IMG/VR virus record: IMGVR_UViG_3300019458_000020
Location: 124,001 to 188,000 of that record
DNA length: 64,000 nt
Direction: 5' to 3' (one strand)
Below the pieces are notes generated by a model, which was given only the letters and a program-made list of their open reading frames with translations, ran no database searches and was not told the DNA's origin. The position numbers were made by a program, and so were the translations under genes. Shown piece by piece: positions 36,137 through 58,606 of the stretch (its first letter is position 1; every line of letters starts with the position of its first letter).

Positions 36137-36223
36137 TGGCGGATGGTGTAGGTCCCGCCCCCAAGACCCGTAGGCCCCATCTGATTTCGAATCAGTGATG
36201 AACACTCATTCATTTCACCATCC
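36137..36223 (-). tRNA. trnS: tRNA-Ser(CGA), atypical T-loop GGCGGGA
   Basis: Anticodon loop TT-CGA-AA, long variable arm, encoded CCA. Confidence 0.8.
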
Positions 36224-36229
36224 GTAAAG

Positions 36230-36317
36230 TGGCGGAGAGTAGAGGGATCGAACCCCTGCATCCCGAAGGATGGCCACAGATTTCCAATCTGGCTCATTGC
36301 CACTCTGACAACTCTCC
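36230..36317 (-). tRNA. trnS: tRNA-Ser(GGA)
   Basis: TT-GGA-AA loop, long variable arm, TTCGATC T-loop, CCA. Confidence 0.92.
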
Positions 36318-36496
36318 AATGGTGACGAAACTTATTACCTACTCCGAATCACGTCGTAGTGCGCATGTTCTGCTTTAGGTCAGCATCTACCTATACGATC
36401 TTCGATTGAACTAAACAATCTACTTATTACTCGTATTTACACCGTTAGTATAAAATACAGCGGCGATTGATATTAGGCGTCCATCACCTACGGATA

Positions 36497-36525
36497 AATA
36501 TATCACCAAAGAGAAAAATTGTCAA
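36497..36525 (-). promoter_or_regulatory. Sigma70-like promoter TTGACA-17-TATATT
   Basis: Direct read; drives the 36320-36490 leader and two Ser tRNAs. Confidence 0.7.
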
Positions 36526-36530
36526 TAAAA

Positions 36531-36890
36531 TTAACGAAACCAAAGTGATTCTTCTGGATTTAACTTACCGTCTTTGAATCTCTTTTCCCAGTCTATAGAT
36601 TTTTCTCCTAAAGCGAGTGATTCCATTATATGATGTTTGATTCGAAGACTTTTCTTATAGATAATTCTTTCTGCTTCAGATAGATATTCTTCTACACAAA
36701 CCTTACATTCATTAAAATCTTTTGCGTCTTGGTCATTAATACAAACATCGCACCCTCCGCCGTTACAAGAACCATTATGACATTCAGGACAAATGATTAT
36801 GGCAATGTCACACAGGTCACACCACACAATAGGATATTTTCCTCTCCACTTTTCAAGAAATGGGTCAACGATTAATTGATTGTTATTCAT
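36531..36890 (-). CDS. Hypothetical Cys-rich protein
   Basis: CDLC, CPEC..GSCNGGGCDVC motifs. Confidence 0.6.
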   Translation of the reverse strand: MNNNQLIVDPFLEKWRGKYPIVWCDLCDIAIIICPECHNGSCNGGGCDVCINDQDAKDFNECKVCVEEYLSEAERIIYKKSLRIKHHIMESLALGEKSIDWEKRFKDGKLNPEESLWFR

Positions 36891-37117
36891 TTTATGCCTA
36901 ATGCTTTTCTTTCTTGTAATATTCTCTGATGTTCACGATTACAATTGTCATGATGGGCTTTTAATCCACTTATTTTTGCACACACAATACACTCATATCC
37001 TGTATCCGAATCTCCACCAGCCCAGCCAGGATAATATATACAGTTTTCTTTTAAAGTCAGTTGACCACATTTCATACATGTGGCAGACTTGAACCAATTA
37101 ATAATTCGTTTAATCAT
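36887..37117 (-). CDS. Hypothetical Zn-ribbon protein
   Basis: CMKC...CIVC. Confidence 0.55.
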   Translation of the reverse strand: MIKRIINWFKSATCMKCGQLTLKENCIYYPGWAGGDSDTGYECIVCAKISGLKAHHDNCNREHQRILQERKALGIK

Positions 37118-37124
37118 ATTTTTA

Positions 37125-38207
37125 TCATTGTTTATAATCTACGTTTAAAATTTTGACCGATAGTTGTCTTCCAAGAACAGAAGAATAACGTGGTTTACAC
37201 GGTCGAAGAACGATTCCCTCTCCGTTATTTTTTCCATACTTAAAATTATTAGCAATTTCCTGTAGTCGTGCTACATTCCAAGTTTCATCTAAAATAAAAC
37301 AGTCTCCAATTTGGTCAACTGTTGGAATATCCAATATTGCACAAGTCAACACAATTTGTCCCCAATCGAGCCATGCGCCATTGTCCAAATCACGAATATT
37401 GAATACACGGAATGATTTTTCCGATATTTCCATTTTGTTTCCCTGAATGGTTGGTCCAACGGCCTCGGCCTGAATTGCAATATTTCGATTGAACTTGGTC
37501 AGTTTCTCAACCAAATTTAACTTATTCACGATTGACCAAAACCCCGTTCCTTCTTTTTGTTCTAGTTTTCGGCTACAAACACGAACCTTTCCATCTTGAT
37601 AAATGATAGTACAAGAACTACCATCGGCCTTGCCTGTGATATAACACAAATCGCCACGAAGTTCATTCAATACTTCATCACCATAATTTAATAGATTGTG
37701 TTCATCCGTCATTGGTATAAGATTTGTTGGAAAATTACCTACTGCTTCAGAACTAATTGGTTCTGGCTTTTCGTATTTGATGATACCAAGAATTTCAGTA
37801 ACGTCGTCGCCCTCCTTTAGATTAGCGATGTTTTTTTCAACTTGAAATACCTCATTACCAATTTCTTTTGAATTTTTAAGAAGAATATCACACGGACATA
37901 CCAATCCCTGAGATGGTGCCCCTTTGAATCTACAATTCCAGATCCGATACTTTTGACGTTCCAAAAAAGAAAAAAATGGATTGGTAGAAGGAACAATGGT
38001 GTCAATAGTAATAAAAACAACCAAATCACCTTCTTTGAATTCGCCTTTCTTGATAACGACCGGCCATTCTTTGATTTTGGCTACCTCTAATCTTTCAACC
38101 TCTTTATTAGGATGTGGTTGAATCAAGTGGATTCTTTGAATTGTTGCTAAATTTTTCATTAGATGTATAAAATTTCGTCGGTTTTTACTAAAAAATATTG
38201 ATAACAA
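37125..38207 (-). CDS. RNA ligase, DRB0094 (Rnl2-like) family; start probably MKNLATIQ
   Basis: LATIQRI...PHP..ERLEVAKI..W.VVIKKGEFKEGDLVVF; motif I ITGKADGSS; AEAVG..IQGN; GEGIVLRP; VKILN. Confidence 0.88.
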   Translation of the reverse strand: MLSIFFSKNRRNFIHLMKNLATIQRIHLIQPHPNKEVERLEVAKIKEWPVVIKKGEFKEGDLVVFITIDTIVPSTNPFFSFLERQKYRIWNCRFKGAPSQGLVCPCDILLKNSKEIGNEVFQVEKNIANLKEGDDVTEILGIIKYEKPEPISSEAVGNFPTNLIPMTDEHNLLNYGDEVLNELRGDLCYITGKADGSSCTIIYQDGKVRVCSRKLEQKEGTGFWSIVNKLNLVEKLTKFNRNIAIQAEAVGPTIQGNKMEISEKSFRVFNIRDLDNGAWLDWGQIVLTCAILDIPTVDQIGDCFILDETWNVARLQEIANNFKYGKNNGEGIVLRPCKPRYSSVLGRQLSVKILNVDYKQ

Positions 38208-38351
38208 GACCCACCATCTCGTCTCACATACGACATGCCGTTACAAAAGTGACAAACGAGTTCTAAAGAATGAGTTTTCCATTTTATTTGTTTCATGGGG
38301 ATTAATATACGAGATTTTTAGAAAAAGTCAAGAAGTTATGAGGAAGAAAAT

Positions 38352-38425
38352 TGGCTGGGGATGATGGAGTTGAACCACCGTCTTTCGATTCAGAGCCGAT
38401 TATAATACCGTTATACTAATCCCCA
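38352..38425 (-). tRNA. trnQ: tRNA-Gln(CTG)
   Basis: CT-CTG-AA loop; TGGGGAT acceptor; CCA. Confidence 0.9.
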
Positions 38426-38430
38426 ATAAA

Positions 38431-38586
38431 TTATGGCCAGTTGGTTACGTTAAACCAAGCCCGGCAACCTTGTCCATCGAATGTAGAATATCCTTCGATC
38501 CATCTTTGTTCTACTGGTTTCGGTTCCGCCACCTTAACCGTCTTTTTCTTGGACCTAATAACCTTGGATTTCTTTTTCGATTTCAT
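38431..38586 (-). CDS. Small basic hypothetical protein (51 aa)
   Basis: Manually read MKSKKKSKVIRSKKKTVKVAEPKPVEQRWIEGYSTFDGQGCRAWFNVTNWP*. Confidence 0.45.
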   Translation of the reverse strand: MKSKKKSKVIRSKKKTVKVAEPKPVEQRWIEGYSTFDGQGCRAWFNVTNWP

Positions 38587-38815
38587 AAAATTGGTGTTCC
38601 GTTTGGGAATTCAACCCATAGTTTCTTAATCCATTCAATTTCTTTGGATTCAAACACTCACGTAACTTCATGAAGGCGACAAACTCTTCAATCCACCACC
38701 CAAATACACGCTCTATGAACACCATCAGATTGTCATCCCTACTATGTTCGACAGCAGTGCATCCAGCAAGACCATATTGGTTTGGTGGTTTTTGTTTGTG
38801 TTTCCTTTGAAACAA
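38555..38815 (-). CDS. Hypothetical protein
   Basis: ORF track; co-oriented. Confidence 0.4.
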   Translation of the reverse strand: MFQRKHKQKPPNQYGLAGCTAVEHSRDDNLMVFIERVFGWWIEEFVAFMKLRECLNPKKLNGLRNYGLNSQTEHQFYEIEKEIQGY

Positions 38816-39100
38816 CCTAACACTAAAATCGTGAGAGTAGTTACCTACTCCCGAGCACCCCCTATGGTGCGCCGTTCCTGAGAGGCGTCGGAGGTTTATT
38901 AAAAAATTACAAGATGCCAGATTTACTCTTATCTGAGTGTAGAGTTTACAACTAACAACGTTGGATGACTTTTATTGTAACATCACCTACAACCTACCAT
39001 CGGTAGGATTTATGTGCCTCTCGGCTTTTCTTTTATAATAGTTTGCTGCTGTAACAGCATCTTATTTCATAATAATAATGTCATACATTACCATTACAAA

Positions 39101-39190
39101 TGGTTGCGGAGCGTTGGAGTTACACCAACCATAGAGACTTTCATCTCCCACCTTATGAGGGTGGCCAGCATCTTCCGGCTTGTGCCCGCG
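39101..39190 (-). tRNA. trnM: Atypical tRNA-Met(CAT): C1.A72 mismatch, bulged acceptor, long variable arm
   Basis: CCACC CTCATAA GGTGG anticodon arm; GAGATGAAAGTCTC extra arm; TGTAACT T-loop; CCA. Confidence 0.75.
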
Positions 39191-39208
39191 AAATCAAAGA
39201 ACAAAAAT

Positions 39209-39284
39209 TGGTAGCGGATAAAAGAATCGCACTTTTCTAAAAATGCTTATGAGACATTCCAGTTCACTAGAACTGTAATCCGCA
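39209..39284 (-). tRNA. trnM: tRNA-Met(CAT)
   Basis: AATGT CTCATAA GCATT; 1:72 mismatch; TGCGATT T-loop; CCA. Confidence 0.8.
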
Positions 39285-39302
39285 GTAAATTCATCTATAA
39301 AT

Positions 39303-39331
39303 ATAATACACTCGAACAAATCGATTGTCAA
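39303..39331 (-). promoter_or_regulatory. Sigma70-like promoter TTGACA-17-TATTAT
   Basis: Direct read; immediately upstream of two Met tRNAs. Confidence 0.7.
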
Positions 39332-39780
39332 ATCAAATTCCAGAGAGTTTTTAAAGATTCATCTGGTGTTTGACGGGTAGTGTTGATAGGTATAAAATTC
39401 TCCAAAGGTTCTTCGAACTCTTTGCAGTGGAAGGATTCACGGCCACGAACTTCGTTAGTATAAACATAAATTTCTTTTATACCAAATTGAGATTTCTTGA
39501 ATTTTTCTCTAACTTCTCTATAAGGATTTACTGTTGAAATGATGACACAAATACCTTGGTTATTAATATGTCTTACTAAATTTTGAAGTATTTCAGTTTG
39601 TTGAATTCTATATTCTTTGGTAAAATTTTCCTTATTGTAAGAATTACCAAATATTGTTCTAAGGTCGTCTCCATCGAGATGAAGAATCGTATCAGACCCT
39701 AACGCTTCGAATGCGTTTTTTAATTTTTTAGCTAATGTGGTCTTTCCACAACCAGGCTGACCTATGAACCAATATATCAT
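39328..39780 (-). CDS. cysC: Adenylyl-sulfate kinase (CysC)-like P-loop kinase
   Basis: IYWFIGQPGCGKTTLA; LDGDDLR; ISTVNPYREVR; FEEP. Confidence 0.75.
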   Translation of the reverse strand: MIYWFIGQPGCGKTTLAKKLKNAFEALGSDTILHLDGDDLRTIFGNSYNKENFTKEYRIQQTEILQNLVRHINNQGICVIISTVNPYREVREKFKKSQFGIKEIYVYTNEVRGRESFHCKEFEEPLENFIPINTTRQTPDESLKTLWNLI

Positions 39781-39804
39781 AAAATAATTGTTGATGTTTC
39801 TTTT

Positions 39805-40368
39805 TTATTTTTTTACAAAATCGATTTTATTCCAATCATCCATTCTTGCACTTAATCCATCACAAAGATGCAAAATCCAAGCAACTTTTGTGTTCGGAGA
39901 AACCGGACTTCCCCATTCTCTATGTCCGTGGTGAGCTAAAATTGCATGTAAAACCGAGTCGTGATATTTTGATTTTACTTCGGGGAAAGATTCTACAGCG
40001 TGACTCCACATTAAAGCCGAACGAGAGATATGATGAATCATTCGTTTATGAACTGTAGGGCCCCAAACGTTAAAATCTTTCTTTTCATAATCATGAATTT
40101 TTCCAACATCATGATACAAAGCAGCAAGAAACAATTCCACGTCATCTACATCTTTTAGCTTTAAAGTTTCTTTGGTAGAAAAACAAAGACGAATAACTTC
40201 TAATGTGTGTTCGGATAATCCATTATCACGATAATGATGATGGTCTGATTTTGCACTTCCCGACCATGTTTGGGGTCGATGGTCATGTAATACATGATGT
40301 ATTAAACTAATAACATCACTTGAAAAGTGAAATGTTTTTGCTAAGTCGTATATTTCATCTACAAACAT
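39805..40368 (-). CDS. HD-domain phosphohydrolase, YhaM/Cbf1-like (no OB fold)
   Basis: HHHY..GLSEHTLEV; LYHDVGKI; ILAHHG..EWGSPV.P; LHLCD.LSA. Start reset to 40368 because the longer ORF overlaps tRNA-Ala. Confidence 0.85.
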   Translation of the reverse strand: MFVDEIYDLAKTFHFSSDVISLIHHVLHDHRPQTWSGSAKSDHHHYRDNGLSEHTLEVIRLCFSTKETLKLKDVDDVELFLAALYHDVGKIHDYEKKDFNVWGPTVHKRMIHHISRSALMWSHAVESFPEVKSKYHDSVLHAILAHHGHREWGSPVSPNTKVAWILHLCDGLSARMDDWNKIDFVKK

Positions 40369-40380
40369 AAAATCAAATCT

Positions 40381-40454
40381 TGGTGGAGCCAAAGAGAATT
40401 GAACCCTTATCTATTCATTGCGAATGAATCATCCTCCCGTTGAACGATGACCCC
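40381..40454 (-). tRNA. trnA: tRNA-Ala(CGC)
   Basis: TT-CGC-AA loop; G3.U70 present; CCA. Confidence 0.92.
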
Positions 40455-40457
40455 ACA

Positions 40458-40748
40458 TTGATAAACTAAAAGTATAGCCGCGGTTCTGTTATTTCAATCA
40501 AACATTTATCTCAGATTTTCATCTGGTTTCTTACTAATAGAAACTGCTCCAACCTTGTCTTGATACCGAATAACTCACATTCTCAGACTTTTTAGGATTG
40601 CTGCGGATTTGTGGTAATAACGCAATTCAACTCTTTATAGACTCGGCCCGGACTCCGAATTGCTCCCAAACAACGAGTTAAGCAGCCACGAACTTCCTCT
40701 AATCACAGGTTTTACTGTGACCAGCGTTTGATTCTTTTAATCAATCAA
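40458..40748 (-). ncRNA. rnpB: Ribonuclease P RNA (compact bacterial-type)
   Basis: CR-I GAGGAAGUUCGUGG and CR-V AACAGAACCGCGGCUAUA form P4 with the bulged U. Also P2 AAUCAAAC/GUUUGAUU, P3 UGGUCACAG/CUGUGAUUA, P5 CUGC/GCAG, P18-like CAGAU-GAAA-AUCUG followed by AGAUAAAUG, and a terminal P1. Confidence 0.85.
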
Positions 40749-40932
40749 AATTACAAAGAACTTTATCTGTTCATCCATTTACAATAAACGGCTATAGGCC
40801 AAAATAGTAAATGAATAAAAAAACTACAAATCATAACATACCACGTCTTATCAAAACGATAAGTTTCATACATGGCAAATATACACCATAACATACCAAA
40901 AGTCAAATAGATTAATAATAAGTTCATAAAAT

Positions 40933-41007
40933 TGGAGCCTCAGGAGGGAGTCGAACCCTCTTTTCTTCATTACCAATGAAGTGTAATAGCCGTTATACTA
41001 CAGAGGC
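40933..41007 (-). tRNA. trnT: tRNA-Thr(GGT)
   Basis: TT-GGT-AA; GCC/GGC acceptor; CCA. Confidence 0.92.
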
Positions 41008-41013
41008 TTAAAA

Positions 41014-41268
41014 TTATTCGGATTTTTCTCCGAATCGTTGCACACCTTTTACGGTAGCTAATCCCAACGTTAAAGTAACGACATTCGTTGGAATGTCAAC
41101 TAATTCTTTTTTTCTAATACAAGTAATTGTCCACAATAAACACAAAATTACTATCCAAAGAGATAACACCATTCTAATAGTAGAAAATCCTCCTGTATTA
41201 TCTTCGAGAAAGGTCCACCACTTTACTTTTTGTTCAGTATCCGTTGAAGCTTCTTTTATGTCACTCAT
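41014..41268 (-). CDS. Small two-TM membrane protein (holin-like)
   Basis: GGFSTIRMVLSLWIVILCLLW...VVTLTLGLATVKGVQRF. Confidence 0.5.
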   Translation of the reverse strand: MSDIKEASTDTEQKVKWWTFLEDNTGGFSTIRMVLSLWIVILCLLWTITCIRKKELVDIPTNVVTLTLGLATVKGVQRFGEKSE

Positions 41269-41269
41269 A

Positions 41270-41434
41270 TTATTTAAGTATTTTCAAGACTAATTTTGAT
41301 TTTTTGAGTTTATTTTGTGTTTTTTCAAATTCTTCCTTACTCACATTCTTTTTAAAATTGTCACTATTTAAACGTTTTTCCAAAAAGGAAATATAATCTT
41401 CCTCATGTTTAATACGCTTTTCTTTTTCATTCAT
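41270..41434 (-). CDS. Small basic hypothetical protein (54 aa)
   Basis: Manually read MNEKEKRIKHEEDYISFLEKRL...KILK*. Confidence 0.45.
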   Translation of the reverse strand: MNEKEKRIKHEEDYISFLEKRLNSDNFKKNVSKEEFEKTQNKLKKSKLVLKILK

Positions 41435-41440
41435 AAATTT

Positions 41441-41518
41441 TGGTGGTCGTGGTGAGATTCGAACTCACACTGTCAACGTTCTCAACGTTGTGCCTGCTGC
41501 CAGTTGGGCTACACGACC
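41441..41518 (-). tRNA. trnL: tRNA-Leu(GAG) with short (5-nt) variable loop
   Basis: CAACG TTGAGAA CGTTG ACAGT; CCA. Confidence 0.88.
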
Positions 41519-53138: not shown

Positions 53139-53214
53139 TGGTCCCCATACCCGGATTCGAACCGGGCTCTCTCGGTCTTCATCCGAGGGCTATCACCAGA
53201 TTAGCTAAATGGGG
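53139..53214 (-). tRNA. trnF: tRNA-Phe(GAA)
   Basis: CTCGG ATGAAGA CCGAG; CCA. Confidence 0.8.
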
Positions 53215-53223
53215 ATAATTAAA

Positions 53224-53298
53224 TGGCGAACGTGAAGGGAATCGAACCCTCCTAATCGCAGAGACAGTGCGATCGATGACCCAGCCTCTTCCACGTCC
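53224..53298 (-). tRNA. trnD: tRNA-Asp(GTC)
   Basis: TCGCA CTGTCTC TGCGA; G73; CCA. Confidence 0.85.
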
Positions 53299-53410
53299 AT
53301 TAAATTAAATTTCTGGATTTCACAAAGAGTAATTAAACGTAGTACTCCATCTAATTACTGGTTCCGCACGTTGGCGTCTATCAGGTTCTTGTAGTATTAC
53401 CTTACTTCAT

Positions 53411-53481
53411 CAACTCTTTGGAATCGAACCAAATCCTCAACGGCAAATCGTTGACCAATGCTACCATTACACTATTAATTG
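53411..53481 (-). pseudogene. Pseudo-tRNA (D- and T-arms intact, 6-nt anticodon loop, decayed acceptor)
   Basis: TAGTGTAATGGTAGCAT; CAACG ATTTGC CGTTG; TTTGG TTCGATT CCAAA; no CCA. Confidence 0.6.
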
Positions 53482-53681
53482 CCTTCGGTATAATACACAA
53501 TAAAAATCATCCCAGAGTATCGTTGCAACTAGCTTTAAGAAAGTCGAATTTGACACCGTTACAAGTCGCCATTCAAAAGGAGTAATGAATGTCTGAACAG
53601 AGTTTAGCTCCACGTTCTCCGGGGGAAAATTTACAAGGATTTCACTACGATTCTAATGATCACTCGAATCTTAATATTCCA

Positions 53682-53756
53682 TAACAACGACCGGAGTTGC
53701 ACTCGGTACTGTCGGCACTGGGCCGATATGCTTACTACATTACACCACAGTTGTTA
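53682..53756 (-). pseudogene. Pseudo-tRNA (Trp/Leu-like, collapsed anticodon loop)
   Basis: TCGGC CCAGT GCCGA; TGCAACT T-loop; no CCA. Confidence 0.55.
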
Positions 53757-53775
53757 ATGTCTATCTTGTATAAAT

Positions 53776-53850
53776 TGGAGGCCCGTGTTGGAATCGAACC
53801 AACATATATCGTTTTGCAGACGACCGCTTGGGCCACTCAGCCAACGAGCC
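53776..53850 (-). tRNA. trnC: tRNA-Cys(GCA)
   Basis: CT-GCA-AA; U73; CCA. Confidence 0.93.
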
Positions 53851-53857
53851 TTAAAAA

Positions 53858-53931
53858 TGGCGAGCGTAAACGGTTCTGCCCCGTTGCATTCCGATAGACA
53901 GTCGGATAGGCTTCTATTACATCATACGCCC
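53858..53931 (-). tRNA. trnD: tRNA-Asp(GTC), T-loop GGCAGAA
   Basis: TCCGA CTGTCTA TCGGA; CCA. Confidence 0.82.
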
Positions 53932-54246
53932 GTTATTATAAATTTTATCTATAAGATATTTGAACCGTTCCACAGTGAAATCCCACTTCATTAAATTGAC
54001 ATGTTTATGAAGCCATTGAACATTCTCTCTGGTATATCCCTTAGAACTATCAATTCTATCCATCGAGTCGGTTCTATCAAACTTATGAACTTTTGAACTA
54101 AATTGTATGGGTTCTCCGGATAATGCACACTTTCTATCTTGTTTTAAGAAGAGATTCCACAAAAATTTTGTATCAAGGTTTTTGGAAAAAGGAATATTGA
54201 CACAATATATTCTTTTAAATTGATTAATTTTTTCTTTATTGTTCAA
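53917..54246 (-). CDS. His-Me finger (HNH-like) endonuclease, possibly N-terminally truncated
   Basis: KQDRKCALSG...SMDRIDSSKGY...NVQWLHKHVNLMK. Confidence 0.7.
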   Translation of the reverse strand: MNNKEKINQFKRIYCVNIPFSKNLDTKFLWNLFLKQDRKCALSGEPIQFSSKVHKFDRTDSMDRIDSSKGYTRENVQWLHKHVNLMKWDFTVERFKYLIDKIYNNGRMM

Positions 54247-54282
54247 GTGTGACTTGAACTATTCATCTGAATCTAAACAAAA

Positions 54283-54361
54283 TGGTGCGTGTGGAAGGAC
54301 TTTCACCGACACTCTTTCCTCCATTACAGGGAGGCGCCTCTTATATTTGGGCTACACACGG
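54283..54361 (-). tRNA. trnY: Atypical tRNA-Tyr(GTA), short variable loop, weak T-stem
   Basis: CCTCC CTGTAAT GGAGG; TGAAAGT T-loop; CCA. Confidence 0.65.
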
Positions 54362-54506
54362 CATAAATTTCATTTTCACATCGTATCGTCAGACGATTCA
54401 ATGTGAAAACGTAAAAATCCGTCAAGGCTGCTAGTATTCAGCAATATTAACCAAATACTTGCCTTATTTAAAGTGTCCTACACTCACCTTGAGTTTTACG
54501 TAAAAT

Positions 54507-54580
54507 TGGTAGGAGAGGCCGGTTACGCTCCAGCGCCAAGACTTTGTAAGAGTCCCAATCTACTATTAATATACTCCCCC
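54507..54580 (-). tRNA. trnV: tRNA-Val(TAC), T-loop AGCGTAA
   Basis: GGACT CTTACAA AGTCT; CCA. Confidence 0.8.
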
Positions 54581-54589
54581 ATTGAAAAC

Positions 54590-54654
54590 AAGAATCAGAA
54601 ATGACTCCATATCTCATACGACTATCAGGAACTAAACCTGTTCCACTGATTCTT
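54590..54654 (-). repeat. Repeated structured element, copy A (YGGAA-hairpin-TAGTCGTATGAG-N5-GAGTCAT)
   Basis: Closing stem AAGAATCAG/CTGATTCTT; same core as 56791-56849. Confidence 0.7.
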
Positions 54655-54662
54655 TAACAAAT

Positions 54663-54740
54663 TGGTAGCACCTGACGGATTCGAACCCTCACTATCTAGT
54701 TTCTGAGACTAGCGACTCCTACCAGTTGGTCTAAGGTGCC
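54663..54740 (-). tRNA. trnL: tRNA-Leu(CAG), short variable loop
   Basis: CTAGT CTCAGAA ACTAG ATAGT; CCA. Confidence 0.88.
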
Positions 54741-54747
54741 ATGAAAT

Positions 54748-54832
54748 TGGTAGTCGTGGTCCGATTCGAACGGGCAAAGAATACTACATTTTGAGTGTAG
54801 CGGTTGTTCCAGTTTCCCTTATCCACACGACC
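54748..54832 (-). tRNA. trnL: tRNA-Leu(CAA), enlarged D-loop, 8-nt variable loop
   Basis: CTACA CTCAAAA TGTAG; CCA. Confidence 0.8.
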
Positions 54833-54900
54833 ATAATGTTCAGGATATTGACTATGTACACGAATACGTGAACATGACTGGTTTCCTGAACATGAAAAAT

Positions 54901-54978
54901 TGGTACCTGCAGTGGGATTCGAACCTACACTACACAAATTTTAAGTTTGTTGACTGCTTCCAATTGGTCTATACAGGC
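54901..54978 (-). tRNA. trnL: tRNA-Leu(TAA), short variable loop
   Basis: ACAAA CTTAAAA TTTGT GTAGT; CCA. Confidence 0.88.
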
Positions 54979-54985
54979 ATTAAAT

Positions 54986-55071
54986 TGGTCCCCCATGTAG
55001 GTATCGATCCTACCCTGCCCGTAGGCGTTTGTTTTACAGACAAACCTTCGTCCTTAGAAGTATAATGAGGG
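54986..55071 (-). tRNA. trnY: tRNA-Tyr(GTA), T-loop ATCGATA
   Basis: TTTGT CTGTAAA ACAAA; GCCTACGGGC variable arm; CCA. Confidence 0.85.
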
Positions 55072-55072
55072 G

Positions 55073-55264
55073 TTAACCTCTGCATTTTTTACAGAGAAAT
55101 TGTTTTCCATTAAATTCCATAAAATCTTTTCCATCATGTTCATTAATGATTGGTTTGTAATCATGACAACAATCACATTCTTCAACGAGTGAATAATTGG
55201 CATAATATATGAATTCCGCGTCGGTCAAACCTTCTGCTAATTTTTCGTGTGTGTTTATTATCAT
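55073..55264 (-). CDS. Small Zn-ribbon hypothetical protein
   Basis: CDCC...CKKC. Confidence 0.5.
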   Translation of the reverse strand: MIINTHEKLAEGLTDAEFIYYANYSLVEECDCCHDYKPIINEHDGKDFMEFNGKQFLCKKCRG

Positions 55265-55464
55265 AAATCGGCGCCGTTGAATCTTATTTCAGAATCGTCT
55301 CCTTCTTTTATTATCTATGGATGAGCCACAATCACCACAGACTCACAGACATGGAGCAATAACTATGTCCACCTTACAACGAGCAGTGACGCCCTAATTG
55401 CTATATGCTTACGATTGATTACGTAATACCGTAAAGGCCCAGAAACATAGTCCACGGCATAAAT

Positions 55465-55554
55465 TGGTGCGCCGGGTGGGATTTGAACCCACAGTGGAGG
55501 ATTTCCCTCATTAGGTTAAAAGCCTAATAGTTTCAGCCGTTTACTTACCGACAT
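55465..55554 (-). tRNA. trnK: tRNA-Lys(TTT) with long variable arm
   Basis: TTAGG CTTTTAA CCTAA; GAGG-GAAAT-CCTC extra arm; CCA. Confidence 0.82.
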
Positions 55555-55953
55555 GAAAAAACTGACTGGCCCACAAGATAGCAGGCACTTAGGTTGACTC
55601 ACGAATTGTCTTAACCTGTCTTAGAAATGATAATTACGGGTAAAGGCATTTCACCTTTACATCTTCTCTATTAAATGAAATATGCATCTTCCAAATAACT
55701 TTGATTTACTATCCACCATCATCCGGCGGGACTCGAACCCAGCTGTTATTCCGGCGCAATGCGGAACGGCACTCCCTTAGCCATCGGAGCTTTTAGGATA
55801 ACATGACTCTCTTGCATCACCATCAACACTATCATTTTTTAAATTGGTCAACATCATCACCGCCTGAGAGCATGAACCTTATACGGTCTAAGAGGGTCAC
55901 TGACATGCCTCGAATGTTACTCATACTACTTCTGCCGCAGCTGTTGACTAAAT

Positions 55954-56028
55954 TGGTCAGGTAGATGGGACTTGCACCCATACAGTTTCCTTCACAGGGA
56001 AAGATGCTACTATTACATCACGTACCTG
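55954..56028 (-). tRNA. trnH: tRNA-His(GTG) lacking G-1:C73
   Basis: TTTCC CTGTGAA GGAAA; A73 with T encoded at -1; TGCAAGT T-loop; CCA. Confidence 0.8.
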
Positions 56029-56388
56029 ATTTAAGATAAAAATGATATGGGTCGATACCTGACATGAATCTCCACCATCCTAAGATGGATATTTAATGAG
56101 TGAGTCATTTCTTAGATTACCATATCCTACTCGTAACTGCGTAGTTTATCCTAAAAATACAAGATACCGTTTTGGTTTGTTCATTAGACAAGTTTTTTTG
56201 GTTGCTGTTTGGTATCTTAAATCTTTATAGTTTCAAACCAATAATTTAAATTTTCAATTTCTTTTTTCTTAACTATTAAAAGTTTTTTTGGAAATTGTTT
56301 CCATTTTGCATCATCTTTAGGAGTTTGATACCCCTTTACTTCAATGTATATTTCTAGTAGAGCAAACAATTGATTTTTCTTAGGAATT

Positions 56389-56465
56389 TGGTGGTAGATG
56401 CAGGATTCGAACCTGCTACCTCAATCTTATCAAGATTTTGCTCTACCATGATGAGCTAATCTACC
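56389..56465 (-). tRNA. trnI: tRNA-Ile(GAT)
   Basis: TT-GAT-AA; canonical; CCA. Confidence 0.92.
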
Positions 56466-56601
56466 ATTAAAATTGCCGGTTACTCTCTCCCGGAAGTCAT
56501 ACCACTTTCCTTTGAATCGCCACGGCGACTTTTTTCACCGAATGTTTAGGAACTGACAGCACCCCCGTCACAAACATTGATTGGTTGTAGGTATCACAAA
56601 T

Positions 56602-56676
56602 TGGTGGAGCCACGGGGAATCGAACCCCGATCTATGGATTGCAAATCTACCGTATTACCATTATACAGATGACCCC
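56602..56676 (-). tRNA. trnA: tRNA-Ala(TGC)
   Basis: TT-TGC-AA; G3.U70; CCA. Confidence 0.9.
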
Positions 56677-56710
56677 ATGAAAAATTGGCTGTTCATATAT
56701 GAACAATAAA

Positions 56711-56787
56711 TGGTTGGGTAGGGGAGAATCGAACTCCCGACCTCTACAATGTCAATGTAGCATTCTTCCGTGCTGAACTACCACCCA
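56711..56787 (-). tRNA. trnV: tRNA-Val(GAC)
   Basis: CTACA TTGACAT TGTAG; CCA. Confidence 0.9.
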
Positions 56788-56790
56788 ATA

Positions 56791-56849
56791 AATGACAACA
56801 TGACTCTATCACTCATACGACTAGCGGGAATGAACCCGTTCCGGTCATT
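56791..56849 (-). repeat. Repeated structured element, copy B
   Basis: AATGAC CGGAA CGGG TTCATT CCCG C TAGTCGTATGAG TGATA GAGTCAT GTT GTCATT. Confidence 0.7.
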
Positions 56850-56856
56850 TTTAAAC

Positions 56857-56932
56857 TGGCTCCCTCTGATGGAATCGAACCACCGCTTTCAGGTTCAAAG
56901 CCTGAGTTGCTGCCATTACAAACCAAGAGGGA
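56857..56932 (-). tRNA. trnQ: tRNA-Gln(TTG)
   Basis: TCAGG CTTTGAA CCTGA; CCA. Confidence 0.9.
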
Positions 56933-57100
56933 ATAAATTAATGTTCTGAGATTTCACAAACGTTCCATCCTACTTTGCTAGCAATTTTGGATGTCTTTTC
57001 AGTAAACCGTCGGCACCATCATCTCCGGAGCGAAACCCGGTGTTCTTTATTTAAACTATTCAGTCCTTGAGACTGACGATGTTCTCCTGGTTATTTAAAA

Positions 57101-57191
57101 TGGTCGGAGTGGTGGGATTCGAACCCACAAGGTCATAAAAGACGCCGAGTTCCAAGCTCGGGTGGCTACCAAGTTACCTCCCTACACTCTG
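57101..57191 (-). tRNA. trnP: tRNA-Pro(TGG) with long variable arm and enlarged D-loop
   Basis: CCGAG CTTGGAA CTCGG; GTC-TTTTAT-GAC extra arm; CCA. Confidence 0.75.
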
Positions 57192-57198
57192 AAAAATC

Positions 57199-57276
57199 TG
57201 GTCTCCCCGGTCGGATTTGAACCGACATTATTCTTGACCCCAAATCAAGTGCCATACCAAGTTAGGCGACGAAGAG
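57199..57276 (-). tRNA. trnP: tRNA-Pro(TGG)
   Basis: CTTGA TTTGGGG TCAAG; CCA. Confidence 0.8.
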
Positions 57277-57286
57277 AATTAAAAAT

Positions 57287-57447
57287 TGGCTCCAGCATCG
57301 GGACTCGAACCCAAACTAACAGCTATAAGGCCGTCGTGCTGCCTACTAGAAATGCGGAATCTCAACGGTTACTACATCATTTTTATTACGTATTCAAAAC
57401 GCCTTCATCCGTTTACTACACCCGACTAGCAATTACACTATACCGGA
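57287..57447 (-). tRNA. Interrupted tRNA (Asn/Gln-like body) with ~87-nt D-loop insertion and 6-nt anticodon loop
   Basis: TCCGGTA/TGCTGGA-G-CCA acceptor; GTGTAATT[insert]GGCAGCAC; ACGGC CTTATA GCTGT; TTGGG TTCGAGT CCCGA. Confidence 0.65.
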
Positions 57448-57456
57448 ATTTAAAAT

Positions 57457-57530
57457 TGGCTGGGACGGCTCGAATCGCACGAGCATCATGCGGGTAACAG
57501 CCGCAGGTCCTACTGTTGAACGACATCCCA
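57457..57530 (-). tRNA. trnN: tRNA-Asn(GTT), T-loop TGCGATT
   Basis: TGCGG CTGTTAC CCGCA; CCA. Confidence 0.85.
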
Positions 57531-57531
57531 A

Positions 57532-57963
57532 TTAAATTGTAATTAATCCTGCATGAACTTCTCCGTGACAATTCGAACACAGAAGAGAACATTTATTTAC
57601 TTCTTTCTTTAAGGATTCAAAAGATTTTGATTTTGAAGTAATTCCAAAACTTTTCTGTTTAGGATCACGATGATGGAAAATTAGACTGGCCATACATCGG
57701 CTGTAACCACATTTTTCACATTTACCTCCTTTATATGTTACTAATCTAATTTTTATTTTACGTCTCCACGTCACCACTTTTCCGCTTCTTCGTTGTCTTC
57801 TTTCTTCATCAGATAATCTAGCTCTACGAACATGAAGAACTTTAATTAATGTTCTTTTACACCAGCCAAACTTTTTGGTAATATCATCTAAAGTATTACC
57901 TTTATTGTAAAAAGATTGGAGAATTTTTATTTCGTTTTCAGTAGGTGGTACACTTCTTTTCAT
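57532..57963 (-). CDS. HNH endonuclease with N-terminal HTH (paralogue of 49785-50366)
   Basis: YKGGKCEKCGY...FHHRDP...KEVNKCSLLCSNCHGEVH. Confidence 0.88.
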   Translation of the reverse strand: MKRSVPPTENEIKILQSFYNKGNTLDDITKKFGWCKRTLIKVLHVRRARLSDEERRQRRSGKVVTWRRKIKIRLVTYKGGKCEKCGYSRCMASLIFHHRDPKQKSFGITSKSKSFESLKKEVNKCSLLCSNCHGEVHAGLITI

Positions 57964-58005
57964 TTATCTAATATACCACAAAAGTTGATTAAATCAACTA
58001 GAAAT

Positions 58006-58093
58006 TGGCTCCAGGAGATGGATTCGAACCACCGGCGGGCTATTCACCTACAGATTAACAGTCTGTCGTCTGCTACCACTCGACTACCCTGGA
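58006..58093 (-). tRNA. trnN: tRNA-Asn(GTT) with long variable region
   Basis: ACAGA CTGTTAA TCTGT; 16-nt extra region; TCC/GGA-G-CCA. Confidence 0.85.
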
Positions 58094-58106
58094 ATAAAAA
58101 ATTGAA

Positions 58107-58169
58107 TTGATGGAATAGGAATTGAACCTATATGTCGGGGCCCCAACGTTTACCAAAATCACCCATCAA
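58107..58169 (-). pseudogene. Anticodon-less tRNA-like element
   Basis: TTGATGG/CCATCAA stem; ATAGG TTCAATT CCTAT; anticodon arm collapsed to GTTGG-GGCC-CCGAC. Confidence 0.5.
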
Positions 58170-58248
58170 ATTTAATGGAGGTAGCGATCCTAATATGGGG
58201 ACTAATCAAACGGACTATATTCCATACTCACGCTGATTCCTCTAAAAT

Positions 58249-58337
58249 TGGTGGTGCCGGTGGGAGTCGAACCCACGGTGGATTATTAATCGTCGGATTA
58301 AAAGTCCGGTGCTTTCGGCCTCTAAGCAAACGACACC
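58249..58337 (-). tRNA. trnK: tRNA-Lys(TTT) with long variable arm
   Basis: CCGGA CTTTTAA TCCGA; GATT-AAT-AATC extra arm; CCA. Confidence 0.85.
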
Positions 58338-58351
58338 ATTAATTAAAAAAT

Positions 58352-58430
58352 TGGTGCGCCGAGTGGGAGTTGAACCCACACGAATATTCCGATTAAGAGT
58401 CGGATGCCCGTCCACTGTAGCTTTCGACGC
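58352..58430 (-). tRNA. trnK: tRNA-Lys(CTT)
   Basis: TCCGA CTCTTAA TCGGA; CCA. Confidence 0.88.
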
Positions 58431-58436
58431 GTAAAT

Positions 58437-58522
58437 TGGTGTTATTAGGAGAATTGAACTCGTATCAAGATCAACCTTCGTAGAAGGATGCCATACCGTC
58501 CGGCATTACGATACAAACAACA
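58437..58522 (-). ncRNA. tRNA-like element with CCA end and non-canonical internal arms
   Basis: TGTTGTT/AATAACA-CCA; ATGCC-GGACGGTAT-GGCAT; CCTT-CTACG-AAGG; GAG TTCAATT CTC. Confidence 0.5.
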
Positions 58523-58529
58523 TATAAAT

Positions 58530-58606
58530 TGGTACCCCAGGTAGGAATTGCACCCACTATTCTCTACGTTCGAAGCGTAGCATGATTCTATTATCACCAC
58601 TGAGGC
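58530..58606 (-). tRNA. trnR: tRNA-Arg(TCG), T-loop TGCAATT
   Basis: CTACG CTTCGAA CGTAG; CCA. Confidence 0.85.

What the first reader, a model, noticed from the sequence alone, without database searches (positions are those of the whole stretch)
36137..58606. Coordinated A18/G55 elbow replacement in about a dozen tRNAs
Seen: tRNAs with G at position 55 (T-loops GGCGGGA, TGCGATT, GGCAGTA, AGCGTTA, AGCGTAA, TGCAAGT, TGCAATT, TGTAACT) consistently show AG instead of the invariant GG in the D-loop. Examples: Ser-CGA, Ser-TGA, Met 39101 and 39209, Ile 50423, Thr-CGT, Gly, Asp 53858, Val 54507, His, Asn 57457, Arg-TCG. tRNAs keeping U55 keep GG (e.g. Ser-GCT). Position 54/58 also varies together (A54/U58, G54/G58). 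Established: G18.Psi55 and T54.A58 lock the elbow and are TrmA/TruB substrates. Inference: this is compensatory, selected architecture rather than decay, possibly to bypass host modification needs or evade elbow-reading nucleases and sensors.
Basis: partly seen in the sequence, partly recalled or inferred. Interest (0 to 1): 0.65.

Follow-up and report, generated by a model that had tools for sequence, protein, structure and literature searches.

The report
Phage tRNAs with swapped elbow pair
About a quarter of the roughly 55 tRNA genes of this 250-kb phage replace the supposedly universal G18·U55 contact that locks the tRNA elbow with an A18·G55 pair. The same coordinated swap recurs in many other phage and mobile tRNA arrays and in the initiator tRNA of CPR bacteria, so it is a working alternative tRNA design, not decay.

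Summary
A cloverleaf scan that ignores loop sequence, plus a covariance model, finds 12 well-formed window tRNAs and one atypical initiator-like Met with A18-G19 in the D-loop and G55 in the T-loop. Two more lie elsewhere in the genome. Every tRNA with U55 keeps GG: 14 versus 38 with no discordant case (Fisher p = 6e-13).

A54/U58 and G54/G58 occur only alongside G55. The 19-56 pair stays complementary: G-C in the window, A-U in some relatives.

These are not pseudogenes. Stems and the encoded CCA are intact, and seven are the phage's only tRNA for their anticodon; Gly and His have no other.

They are not one paralogous lineage either. Syntenic orthologues in related phages are canonical for Met and Ser-CGA.

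The same architecture appears in over 100 viral contigs, in dense tRNA arrays of Verrucomicrobiota genomes, and in CPR initiator tRNAs. UGNRA with an intercalated adenine is the standard T-loop solution outside tRNA.

Such tRNAs cannot carry Ψ55 or Gm18. Whether that helps them evade or bypass host factors is untested. I found no description of this variant in the literature searched.

The parts
36137..36223 (-). tRNA-Ser(CGA), alternative elbow: D-loop ATGAGTGT (A18 G19), T-loop GGCGGGA (G54 G55 C56 G57 G58), long variable arm, encoded CCA
   Evidence: Syntenic orthologues in L092, G001 and G002 are canonical. Missed by ARAGORN default and by Rfam.
39101..39190 (-). Initiator-like tRNA-Met(CAT): C1xA72 mismatch, bulged acceptor stem, long variable arm, D-loop region CGGAAGATG, T-loop TGTAACT (G55, U56; A18 A19 inferred)
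   Evidence: manual parse. Conserved in L092 (TGTGACT) and L101 (TGTAACT). Atypical, cloverleaf score 18.4.
39209..39284 (-). tRNA-Met(CAT), U1xU72: D-loop TCTAGTGA, T-loop TGCGATT
   Evidence: The syntenic L092 orthologue has TCTGGGA and TTCGATT.
46714..46801 (-). tRNA-Ser(TGA): D-loop ACAAGCGTG, T-loop GGCGGGA
   Evidence: Found by ARAGORN only at a relaxed threshold.
50423..50496 (-). tRNA-Ile(GAT): D-loop AATAGTA, T-loop TGCGATT, C33
50504..50577 (-). tRNA-Thr(CGT): D-loop AAAAGCA, T-loop GGCAGTA (G54/G58)
   Evidence: The G001 orthologue is 90% identical in the body but has AGCGTTA (A54/U58).
52078..52154 (-). tRNA-Gly(TCC): D-loop AGAAGTG, T-loop AGCGTTA (A54/U58). The only Gly tRNA of the phage.
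53060..53134 (-). tRNA-Phe(GAA)-like: D-loop AGATAGAT, T-loop AGCGTTA, weak anticodon stem (3/5 pairs)
   Evidence: Alternative-elbow Phe tRNAs also occur in G001, G002 and G003.
53858..53931 (-). tRNA-Asp(GTC): D-loop AATAGAA, T-loop GGCAGAA
54507..54580 (-). tRNA-Val(TAC): D-loop AATAGTA, T-loop AGCGTAA
55954..56028 (-). tRNA-His(GTG): D-loop (T)AATAGTA, T-loop TGCAAGT. The only His tRNA of the phage.
57457..57530 (-). tRNA-Asn(GTT): D-loop AACAGTA, T-loop TGCGATT
58530..58606 (-). tRNA-Arg(TCG): D-loop TAATAGAA, T-loop TGCAATT
53682..53755 (-). Degenerate copy of an alternative-elbow tRNA: 6-nt T-loop TGCAAC, no CCA. Probable pseudogene.
54283..54361 (-). Tyr(GTA)-like gene: T-loop TGAAAGT (G55 A56), D-loop AAATATAAG (A18 U19 possible), weak T-stem (3/5 pairs)
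   Evidence: Rfam 28 bits, just under the gathering score.
36230..61812 (-). The surrounding array of about 35 canonical tRNA genes (GG in the D-loop, U55-C56 in the T-loop), all on the same strand and all encoding CCA. Examples: Ser-GGA 36230-36317, Trp 58704-58777, Met 61738-61812.
37125..40392 (-). Protein genes inside the array: RNA ligase (37125-38207), P-loop kinase (39328-39780), HD phosphohydrolase (39805-40392). A tRNA-repair-like set.
62826..63284 (-). GIY-YIG endonuclease gene next to the array
   Evidence: PF01541, E = 1e-19

Best explanation
These are functional tRNA genes whose elbow is built differently.

In ordinary tRNA, G18 slots into the gap between T-loop residues 57 and 58 and bonds to U/Ψ55. 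Here an adenine takes position 18 and a guanine takes position 55.

This is the 'UGNRA T-loop plus intercalated adenine' arrangement. [quoted passage not shown] There the adenine fills the 4/5 gap and hydrogen-bonds to the sugar edge of the G at loop position 2.

G19-C56, the exposed platform that the ribosome and RNase P stack on, and R57 are kept, so the outer face of the elbow is unchanged. In this G55 background the 54-58 closing pair can also be A·U or G·G.

Both members of the 18/55 pair must change together (strong epistasis), which explains the near-total absence of intermediates.

What is shown: the covariation, the structural integrity of the genes, the orthologue switches and the wide distribution.

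What is inferred: the 3D geometry, and the biochemical consequence that these tRNAs cannot receive Ψ55 (TruB), Gm18 (TrmH) or, with A54/G54, m5U54 (TrmA).

Why the state is common in mobile tRNA sets is unresolved. I lean slightly towards an advantage of being independent of, or invisible to, host factors that read the canonical T-loop. Nearly neutral fixation in redundant tRNA sets is almost as likely.
For: - Perfect 18/55 association in the genome: 14/0/0/38, p = 5.7e-13. Across five related genomes: 28/3/1/123, p = 2e-26.
- Over 1,500 further tRNAs around the pattern hits: 473 with no GG and G55, and 977 with GG and U55, against 27 with GG and G55 and 53 with no GG and U55.
- 19-56 is always complementary: 147 G-C and 6 A-U.
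- Cloverleaf pairing is 95.4% with massive covariation on 115 aligned tRNAs.
- Every well-formed variant tRNA encodes CCA. Seven alternative anticodons have no canonical copy, and Gly and His have no other tRNA.
- Syntenic orthologues switch both positions: Met in the window versus L092; Ser-CGA in the window versus L092, G001 and G002.
- Thr-CGT orthologues 90% identical in the body swap G54/G58 for A54/U58.
- Alternative tRNAs do not cluster. The elbow state needs 24 changes on a body-sequence tree (shuffled mean 27). Alt-alt identity is 0.34 versus 0.36 for alt-canonical.
- A CPR genome's only initiator-type tRNA-Met carries AATAGTA/TGCAAAT while its 36 other tRNAs are canonical. The same tRNA appears in 28 of the pattern hits, most from CPR genomes.
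- Structural precedent: PMC3664808, bioRxiv 10.1101/2022.12.26.521914, PMC4810234.
Against: - No structure, expression, aminoacylation or modification data exist for any of these tRNAs. Only DNA runs from cave metagenomes hold the sequence.
- The A18·G55 geometry is inferred by analogy. A54·U58 and G54·G58 closing pairs have no precedent in the papers I read.
- Some window copies are clearly degenerate (53682-53755, 54283-54361, and the weak anticodon stem of 53060-53134), so part of the set may be decaying.
- The array holds many other oddities: long variable arms, missing D-stems, C33. These could indicate generally relaxed constraint.
- The experimentally studied Anabaena tRNA array is almost entirely canonical, with 1 variant among the tRNAs ARAGORN finds in the operon. 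The variant is therefore not a general property of mobile arrays.
Confidence: 0.8

Rival explanations
1. Adaptive orthogonality. The A18·G55 elbow is selected in phages and mobile arrays because it removes the U54-U55 and G18 substrates. The tRNAs then no longer depend on host TruB, TrmA or TrmH, and are not recognised by host or competitor nucleases or sensors that read the canonical T-loop.
For: - The variant is concentrated in mobile, supernumerary sets. In Verrucomicrobiae genome G006, all dispersed housekeeping tRNAs recovered are canonical, while two dense arrays are almost entirely G55 tRNAs lacking GG.
- Whole arrays of 12-14 variant tRNAs exist in viral and bacterial loci.
- The direction of change for Ser-CGA in this phage lineage is canonical to variant, with three outgroups.
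- tRNA-repair-like genes (RNA ligase, kinase, HD) sit inside the array, suggesting conflict over tRNA.
- PMC8421152 proposes that array tRNAs may buffer toxin RNases.
- From memory, not checked here: a Burkholderia CdiA-CT toxin is reported to cleave tRNA between positions 54 and 55.
Against: - No nuclease, sensor or modification dependence was tested or identified. The host is unknown.
- About three quarters of the phage's own tRNAs keep the canonical elbow, including duplicates of the variant ones.
- CPR initiator tRNAs carry the variant in a chromosomal, non-mobile context.
Confidence: 0.4
2. Nearly neutral alternative state. A18·G55 is roughly as good as G18·U55. It is reached occasionally through a deleterious intermediate, mostly in redundant, fast-evolving tRNA sets where purifying selection is weaker. 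It then persists because going back needs two changes again.
For: - The variant is scattered over many amino-acid identities without clustering.
- It coexists with canonical duplicates.
- The same arrays show other elbow variants (A19-U56, C55) and many structural oddities.
- Intermediates are rare but present: 4 of 155.
Against: - Near-complete conversion of some arrays is hard to obtain by rare neutral double changes.
- Absence from the housekeeping tRNAs recovered in the genomes examined, apart from the CPR initiator, implies the two states are not equivalent in all contexts.
Confidence: 0.35
3. Decay. The A18/G55 genes are pseudogenes or non-translational tRNA-like elements, and the correlation is a by-product of loss of constraint.
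For: - Low scores with standard finders. ARAGORN at default finds 3 of 13. Rfam finds 5 at its gathering threshold and a sixth at 34 bits in the E-value search.
- Two degenerate copies and one weak anticodon stem in the window.
Against: - Random decay would not produce a perfect two-site association, keep 19-56 complementary, or keep 20-22 of 21 stem pairs and the CCA.
- Seven are the phage's only tRNA for their anticodon.
- They are conserved across related phages with compensatory stem changes.
- An essential CPR initiator tRNA has the same elbow.
Confidence: 0.04
4. Phylogenetic artefact. All variant tRNAs descend from one variant ancestor by duplication and anticodon change, so the 18/55 correlation is a single event counted many times.
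For: - Shared loop words among different identities: TGCGATT in Met, Ile and Asn; GGCGGGA in both Ser tRNAs.
- The two Ser tRNAs are each other's near relatives, with 62% body identity.
Against: - Stem identity between variant tRNAs of different amino acids (0.34) is no higher than between variant and canonical tRNAs (0.36).
- 24 changes of state are needed on the body tree, against a shuffled mean of 27.
- The nearest relatives of Met, Ser-TGA, Leu-TAG and Arg-TCG are same-anticodon tRNAs with other elbow states.
- Syntenic orthologue switches.
Confidence: 0.05

Closest known systems
Canonical tRNA elbow (G18·Ψ55, G19-C56, T54·A58)
   Same: Same cloverleaf, same 7-nt T-loop, same G53-C61, G19-C56 and R57, and the same position for the intercalating D-loop base. 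Most are still recognisable as tRNA by Rfam RF00005 at reduced scores.
   Different: The intercalating base is A, not G, and loop position 2 is G, not U. 54/58 can be A/U or G/G. Ψ55 and Gm18 are chemically impossible, and so is m5U54 in the A54/G54 forms. Recent reviews call U55 and G18 conserved or universal (PMC7912444, PMC4810234).
[quoted passage not shown]
   Same: G at loop position 2, a purine at position 4, and a U·A closing pair in 7 of the 13 window genes. In those RNAs an adenine fills the 4/5 gap and bonds to the sugar edge of the position-2 G (PMC3664808; bioRxiv 10.1101/2022.12.26.521914). That preprint notes that tRNA is the exception in having U at position 2.
   Different: Here the motif sits in a tRNA and the adenine comes from the D-loop. 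Position 3 still makes the tRNA-specific Watson-Crick pair with residue 19. The A·U and G·G closing pairs are not part of the described consensus. The geometry is inferred, not solved.
Other natural elbow variants: A54·A58 in the eukaryotic initiator tRNA and in eukaryotic tRNA-Ala
   Same: Identity-specific departures from the T54·A58 pair that covary with other tertiary positions (PMC7566577).
   Different: Those keep G18 and U55. They are confined to particular eukaryotic tRNAs, not spread over 13 or more identities in one genome.
Phage tRNA clusters and bacterial long tRNA arrays (L-arrays)
   Same: A dense same-strand array of about 50 tRNA genes interspersed with small ORFs, with a homing-type endonuclease (GIY-YIG) beside it. 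It is supernumerary and horizontally mobile (PMC8421152, PMC4758250, PMC6409571).
   Different: The array papers read do not mention elbow architecture. The best-studied array, the Anabaena trn operon, is almost entirely canonical, with 1 G55 gene.
Mitochondrial tRNAs with reduced D/T loops
   Same: They lack the G18G19 and TΨC signatures.
   Different: Mitochondrial tRNAs lose the elbow interaction. Here loop sizes, G19-C56 and covariation show the elbow is kept and rebuilt.

Membership tests
tRNA (Rfam RF00005 / cloverleaf tRNA gene) | Four-arm cloverleaf with 7/4/5/5 bp stems | tested here: met
   19-22 of 21 possible pairs in the 12 well-formed variant genes. 95.4% of cells paired on 115 aligned tRNAs, with 0/500 shuffles as high.
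tRNA (Rfam RF00005 / cloverleaf tRNA gene) | 7-nt anticodon loop with U33 and purine 37 | tested here: met
   Met in all except Ile 50423-50496, which has C33.
tRNA (Rfam RF00005 / cloverleaf tRNA gene) | Score at or above the Rfam gathering threshold (29 bits) | tested here: inconclusive
   Asn 47.6, Gly 43.3, His 42.7, Arg 41.0, Val 39.7 and Asp 34.4 bits pass. Ile, Met 39209, Thr-CGT, both Ser, the initiator-like Met and the Phe-like gene are not reported even at E <= 1. They score 26-72 bits with a model built from window tRNAs.
tRNA (Rfam RF00005 / cloverleaf tRNA gene) | Invariant G18 G19 in the D-loop and U54 U55 C56 in the T-loop | tested here: not met
   A18 and G55 in all 13. 54 is A or G in 7 of them. 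56 is U in the initiator-like Met. This is the finding itself.
tRNA (Rfam RF00005 / cloverleaf tRNA gene) | Expressed, processed and aminoacylated | not testable with these tools
   Only DNA contigs of two cave-metagenome runs hold the sequence.
T-loop motif of the UGNRA + intercalated A type | G at loop position 2 and purine at position 4 | tested here: met
   All 13: N-G-C/U-R-N.
T-loop motif of the UGNRA + intercalated A type | U (or Y/A) at position 1 pairing with A at position 5 | tested here: inconclusive
   U54/A58 in Met, initiator-like Met, Ile, His, Asn and Arg. A54/U58 in Gly, Phe-like and Val. G54/G58 in both Ser, Thr and Asp.
T-loop motif of the UGNRA + intercalated A type | An adenine intercalated between positions 4 and 5 and bonded to the position-2 G | not testable with these tools
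   By sequence, A occupies the D-loop position that G18 holds in canonical tRNA, unambiguously so in 7-nt D-loops. The 3D contact is inferred from PMC3664808 and the preprint.
Mobile long tRNA array (phage cluster / L-array) | At least 20 tRNA genes at high density on one strand | tested here: met
   About 50 tRNA or tRNA-like genes on the minus strand between 36.1 and 61.8 kb.
Mobile long tRNA array (phage cluster / L-array) | Associated homing endonuclease / evidence of horizontal spread | tested here: met
   GIY-YIG gene at 62826-63284. Related arrays occur in several viral contigs with different gene content.
tRNA pseudogenes | Broken stems, lost CCA, no conservation, redundancy | tested here: not met
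   Not met for the 12 well-formed genes. Met for 53682-53755 and probably for 54283-54361.

The most novel reading that the evidence does not exclude
A18·G55 tRNAs form a widespread, so far unrecognised class of Ψ55-less 'orthogonal-elbow' tRNAs. On this reading, mobile elements (phages, tRNA arrays) keep them because they work on the ribosome while escaping host enzymes, toxins or sensors that read the canonical T-loop. Their systematic under-detection by standard tRNA finders would mean phage tRNA repertoires are larger than annotated.
Probability: 0.3. Interest if true: 0.85.

Novelty: new variant of a known kind. Interest (0 to 1): 0.72.

Why it matters
G18, U55 (as Ψ55) and T54 are textbook invariants of tRNA. 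They are the substrates of TrmH, TruB and TrmA, and they feed into the scoring of tRNA gene finders.

A natural, recurrent, coordinated replacement matters for four reasons:
- It shows the tRNA elbow has a second stable solution, the one that other structured RNAs use.
- It offers a natural experiment on what Ψ55, m5U54 and Gm18, and the chaperone roles of their enzymes, are actually for.
- It implies that annotation pipelines miss a sizeable share of phage and array tRNAs. In this window, 4 of 13 were found by neither ARAGORN at default nor Rfam.
- It gives a concrete handle for testing whether mobile elements build tRNAs that are orthogonal to host tRNA-directed defence or quality control.

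The presence of the same elbow in the CPR initiator tRNA suggests it may also tune interactions specific to initiation.

Tried and rejected
- The in-array 254-aa gene (52251-53015) was used to fetch relatives. It gave 206 homologues, but all 80 loci fetched are tRNA-free and non-syntenic contigs, so it was useless for this question.
- megablast of 10 kb against the phage collection gave only tRNA-Pro hits.
- MAFFT alignment of all tRNAs misaligned the D-arm. I replaced it with a gapless 8-sequence seed and a covariance model.
- The CM alignment still misplaces G18 in D-loops with two or more alpha residues (TG/UC artefacts). The statistics therefore rest on my own 3'-anchored cloverleaf parse and on the register-free 7-nt D-loop subset.
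- The count of structure pairs cannot score A·G or G·G as pairs. It is informative only for the stems, 19-56 and U54·A58 versus A54·U58.
- The Anabaena PCC 7120 trn operon was checked as a possible experimental proxy. Only one of its tRNAs (Glu-CTC) has the variant elbow, and the paper does not say whether that one is among the 23 detected as aminoacylated.
- Sequencing runs: only two DNA contig sets from cave metagenomes, no RNA. There are no differences at elbow positions.
- The host was not identified. The Verrucomicrobiota lead rests only on shared tRNA architecture.
- Literature searches for A18 with G55 in tRNA found nothing relevant. Subscription literature is not covered.

Full report
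**Setting.** The window is bases 124,001-188,000 of a single 250,813-bp virus record with 35.8% G+C. It carries a baseplate wedge gene and an RNA ligase. Its sequence is held by two cave-metagenome runs, with 0 and 2 differences over 5.7 kb and none at elbow positions.

ARAGORN at default finds 32 tRNA genes in the window, all on the minus strand between 36.2 and 58.8 kb, and 41 in the genome. Rfam adds several more. All well-formed genes encode the 3' CCA.

**Checking the observation without circularity.** tRNA finders reward GG in the D-loop and TTC in the T-loop, so I made two independent censuses.

- The first is a script that looks only for CCA preceded by a cloverleaf: 7-bp acceptor, 4-bp D, 5-bp anticodon and 5-bp T stems, and a 7-nt T-loop of any sequence. 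Shuffled genomes give 1-3 hits. In the real genome, hits scoring below 20 lie outside the tRNA regions and lack tRNA-like loops, while real tRNAs score 20-22.
- The second is a covariance model built from a gapless seed of four canonical and four variant window tRNAs, run with filters off.

They add a Phe-like gene (53060-53134) and two degenerate copies.

In the whole genome, 14 well-formed tRNAs have A18 and G55, 38 have G18 and U55, and none is mixed (Fisher p = 5.7e-13).

Where the D-loop has 7 nucleotides, the register is unambiguous because positions 18 and 19 are the 4th and 5th loop bases. In that subset, 51 tRNAs from this and four related genomes, the counts are GG/UC 35, AG/GC 14, AA/GU 1 and GA/UU 1.

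The 54/58 claim also holds. A54/U58 and G54/G58 occur only together with G55: U/A 11, G/G 10 and A/U 8 in the G55 class, against U/A 118, C/A 2 and A/A 2 in the U55 class.

Two details of the finding are wrong. The canonical Ser is Ser-GGA, not Ser-GCT. No RNase P RNA is detectable in the genome.

**Not decay.**
- The variant genes keep 19-22 of 21 stem pairs and the encoded CCA.
- On 115 aligned tRNAs of this phage clade, 95.4% of stem cells pair, with strong covariation (0 of 500 shuffles as high).
- Seven variant anticodons have no canonical copy in the phage: Gly-TCC, His-GTG, Leu-TAG, Arg-TCG, Ser-CGA, Ser-TGA and Thr-CGT. Without the variant genes the phage would lack Gly and His tRNAs; with them it covers all 20 amino acids.
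- Decay does happen. 53682-53755 has lost CCA and one T-loop base, and 54283-54361 has a weak T-stem. These are exceptions.

**Not one lineage counted many times.** The RNA ligase inside the array led to relatives.

- The closest relative, L092 (73% amino-acid identity), is syntenic: Met, initiator-like Met, Ala, Gln-CTG, RNA ligase, Ser-GGA, Ser-CGA.
- Its Met is the orthologue of window Met 39209-39284 but reads TCTGGGA / TTCGATT where the window reads TCTAGTGA / TGCGATT.
- Its Ser-CGA, and the syntenic Ser-CGA of two further relatives (G001, G002), are canonical, while the window's has GAGTG / GGCGGGA. That change is therefore derived in this phage's lineage.
- The Thr-CGT genes of the window and G001 are 90% identical outside the loops, yet have GGCAGTA versus AGCGTTA. 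That is a G54·G58 to A54·U58 exchange.
- Window Arg-TCG (A18 G19 / G55 C56) is closest to a G002 Arg-TCG with G18 A19 / U55 U56.

Across 155 tRNAs, the elbow state needs 24 changes on a tree built from stems and anticodon loops only, for 29 variant tRNAs and a shuffled mean of 27. Amino-acid identity is recovered far better on the same tree. Stem identity between variant tRNAs of different amino acids (0.34) is no higher than between variant and canonical ones (0.36).

The tree has only 50 columns and is weak. The synteny cases do not depend on it.

**The elbow as a whole covaries in this clade.**
- G001 has a Cys tRNA with AAAAATA / TGTAAAT (A18 A19, G55 U56).
- G002 has several tRNAs with G18 A19 / U55 U56.
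- 19-56 is complementary in every case parsed: 147 G-C and 6 A-U.
- G003 has four tRNAs with G18 and C55.
- Only 4 of 155 tRNAs look like 18/55 intermediates, and all four have ambiguous D-loop registers.

**Breadth.** I scanned for a deliberately narrow pattern: D-loop AATAGTA, Y33, R37, G53-UGCRA, C61 and CCA at fixed spacing. It matches once in the window and in none of 100 shuffled windows.

Of the 81 matches parsed, 63 have 18 or more of 21 stem pairs, giving 47 distinct sequences and 18 anticodons.

Three groups stand out:
- An initiator-type tRNA-Met of Patescibacteria/CPR (Saccharibacteria, WWE3, Nomurabacteria and others).
- tRNA-Asn, Gln and His of Verrucomicrobiota.
- A Nostoc family with CTA, AGT or ATT anticodons.

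Two follow-ups sharpen this.

- In a complete Verrucomicrobiae chromosome (G006), every dispersed housekeeping tRNA recovered is canonical. Two paralogous dense arrays, at 346-361 kb and 2,433-2,435 kb, consist almost entirely of G55 tRNAs without GG. Some there have 56 changed as well.
- In a roughly 0.9-Mb Nomurabacteria genome (G007), 36 tRNAs are canonical. The only exception is the one tRNA-Met with an A1xC72 mismatch, the initiator hallmark, which reads AATAGTA / TGCAAAT. An essential single-copy tRNA with this elbow is the best available evidence that the design works in translation.

Around the pattern hits, ARAGORN finds whole arrays with up to 14 variant tRNAs. Over roughly 1,500 tRNAs the association holds: 473 with no GG and G55, 977 with GG and U55, 27 with GG and G55, and 53 with no GG and U55. 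The loci were selected for one variant tRNA each, so these counts show association, not prevalence.

The experimentally studied Anabaena trn operon is almost wholly canonical, with one G55 gene. The variant is therefore frequent in some mobile arrays but not a defining trait of them.

**How it most likely works.** In tRNA, the T-loop is a pentaloop motif closed by U54·A58. [quoted passage not shown]

Outside tRNA the same motif has a different consensus.
- In FMN and cobalamin riboswitches it is UGNRA (88.7%). [quoted passage not shown] The authors note that tRNA differs in having U at position 2 (bioRxiv 10.1101/2022.12.26.521914).
- In the double T-loop modules of the L1 stalk, RNase P and T-box Stem I, the conserved UG..A and AG..A loops each receive the other's adenine in the 4/5 gap. 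That adenine is paired trans Watson-Crick/sugar-edge with the position-2 G (PMC3664808).

The window's UGCRA loops with A at position 18 are this general solution transplanted into tRNA. G19-C56 and R57 are kept. The exposed platform used by the L1 stalk, RNase P and T-boxes is therefore unchanged.

This explains why 18 and 55 must change together and why intermediates are rare. The geometry is inferred, not observed. The A54·U58 and G54·G58 closures are outside the described consensus.

**Consequences and motive.** By established enzymology, G55 cannot become Ψ55 (TruB), A18 cannot become Gm18 (TrmH), and A54 or G54 cannot become m5U54 (TrmA).

Whether that is the point of the change is open. 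For an adaptive reading:
- the concentration in mobile, supernumerary sets;
- near-complete conversion of some arrays;
- the canonical-to-variant direction for Ser-CGA;
- a tRNA-repair-like gene trio (RNA ligase, P-loop kinase, HD phosphohydrolase) inside the array, and a GIY-YIG endonuclease beside it.

Against it:
- three quarters of the phage's tRNAs stay canonical;
- the CPR initiator case is not mobile;
- the arrays show many other oddities that suggest looser constraint.

I put the adaptive reading at about 0.4 and a nearly neutral alternative state at about 0.35.

**Comparison with what is known, and novelty.** Reviews of the elbow and of T-loop modification treat G18 and U55 as conserved or universal and mention only A54·A58 as a variant. 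Papers on phage tRNA clusters and bacterial tRNA arrays that I read do not discuss elbow architecture.

Full-text searches for A18 with G55 in tRNA returned nothing relevant. The library excludes most subscription journals, so prior description cannot be excluded.

I file this as a new variant of a known kind: tRNA genes, in a known kind of phage tRNA array, with an apparently undescribed and widely recurrent alternative tertiary pair.

There is a practical corollary. ARAGORN at default found 3 of the 13 window genes and Rfam 6. Ser-CGA, Thr-CGT, the initiator-like Met and the Phe-like gene were found by neither. Ser-TGA appeared only with ARAGORN at a relaxed threshold.

Noticed in passing
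window 55465-55554, 58249-58337, 58006-58093, 57101-57191, 39101-39190: tRNAs that are normally class I (Lys-TTT twice, Asn-GTT, Pro-TGG, initiator-like Met) carry long, base-paired variable arms like class II tRNAs. More distant relatives have long-arm Ile-TAT and Met (L094-L100).
   Followed up: partly
window 58107-58168, 53417-53474, 58438-58522, 57287-57359, 54751-54832, 53225-53298: tRNA-like remnants or oddities. One has an acceptor and T arm but a GGGGCCCC hairpin in place of the anticodon arm. One has a T and D arm without an acceptor. One has a 6-nt anticodon loop. A Leu-CAA has a roughly 17-nt D-loop. An Asp lacks a D-stem.
   Followed up: partly
window 50423-50496: The variant tRNA-Ile(GAT) has C33 instead of the near-universal U33 (anticodon loop CCGATAA).
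   Followed up: no
window 37125-40392 and 48205-49071: RNA ligase, P-loop kinase (APS-kinase/Zeta-like) and HD phosphohydrolase genes lie among the tRNA genes, resembling a tRNA repair set. A radical SAM gene lies further along the array.
   Followed up: partly
window 62826-63284: A GIY-YIG endonuclease gene lies just beyond the array, as seen for homing endonucleases next to other phage tRNA clusters.
   Followed up: no
genome 194949-195024 (outside window; L008:7053-7125): A well-formed canonical tRNA with anticodon CTA (reads UAG). This is a possible amber suppressor or a sign of stop-codon reassignment late in infection. I did not test the code.
   Followed up: no
genome about 197,242-197,649 (L008:9343-9750): The phage encodes a tmRNA (Rfam 107 bits). 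Its tRNA-like domain has a canonical T-loop (TTCAACT).
   Followed up: partly
window 52251-53015: A 254-aa protein with no Pfam hit has 206 homologues at 65-73% identity in viral contigs. The 80 loci fetched are otherwise unrelated and carry no tRNAs nearby, so this looks like a widely exchanged phage gene of unknown function.
   Followed up: partly
L111 (G003, 344-kb viral contig) 2888-3652: The tRNAs of this relative lack an encoded CCA. Four have G18 with C55 (T-loops TCCGAAT and TCCGAGT), another departure from U55.
   Followed up: no
L109 (G002) 1735-1805, 1816-1888, 5296-5367, 17355-17426: tRNAs with G18 A19 in the D-loop and U55 U56 in the T-loop. The 19-56 Watson-Crick pair has switched from G-C to A-U.
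   Followed up: partly
L269, L280, L285, L288, L341, L344 (Nostoc genomes): A conserved Nostoc tRNA-like family (TACATAC...AATAGTA...TGCGATT...ACCA) with CTA, AGT or ATT anticodons and the A18/G55 elbow.
   Followed up: no
G006 (Verrucomicrobiae chromosome OY969416.1) 346-361 kb and 2,433.4-2,435.4 kb: Two paralogous dense arrays of variant-elbow tRNAs with the same gene order (His, Thr-CGT, Phe, Ile, Asn, Arg, Pro, Asp ... Gly). Whether they lie in prophages or other mobile elements was not examined.
   Followed up: partly
window 57088-57170 (+): Relaxed ARAGORN calls a tRNA-Arg on the plus strand, antisense to tRNA-Pro 57101-57191. This is a mirror-image false positive.
   Followed up: yes
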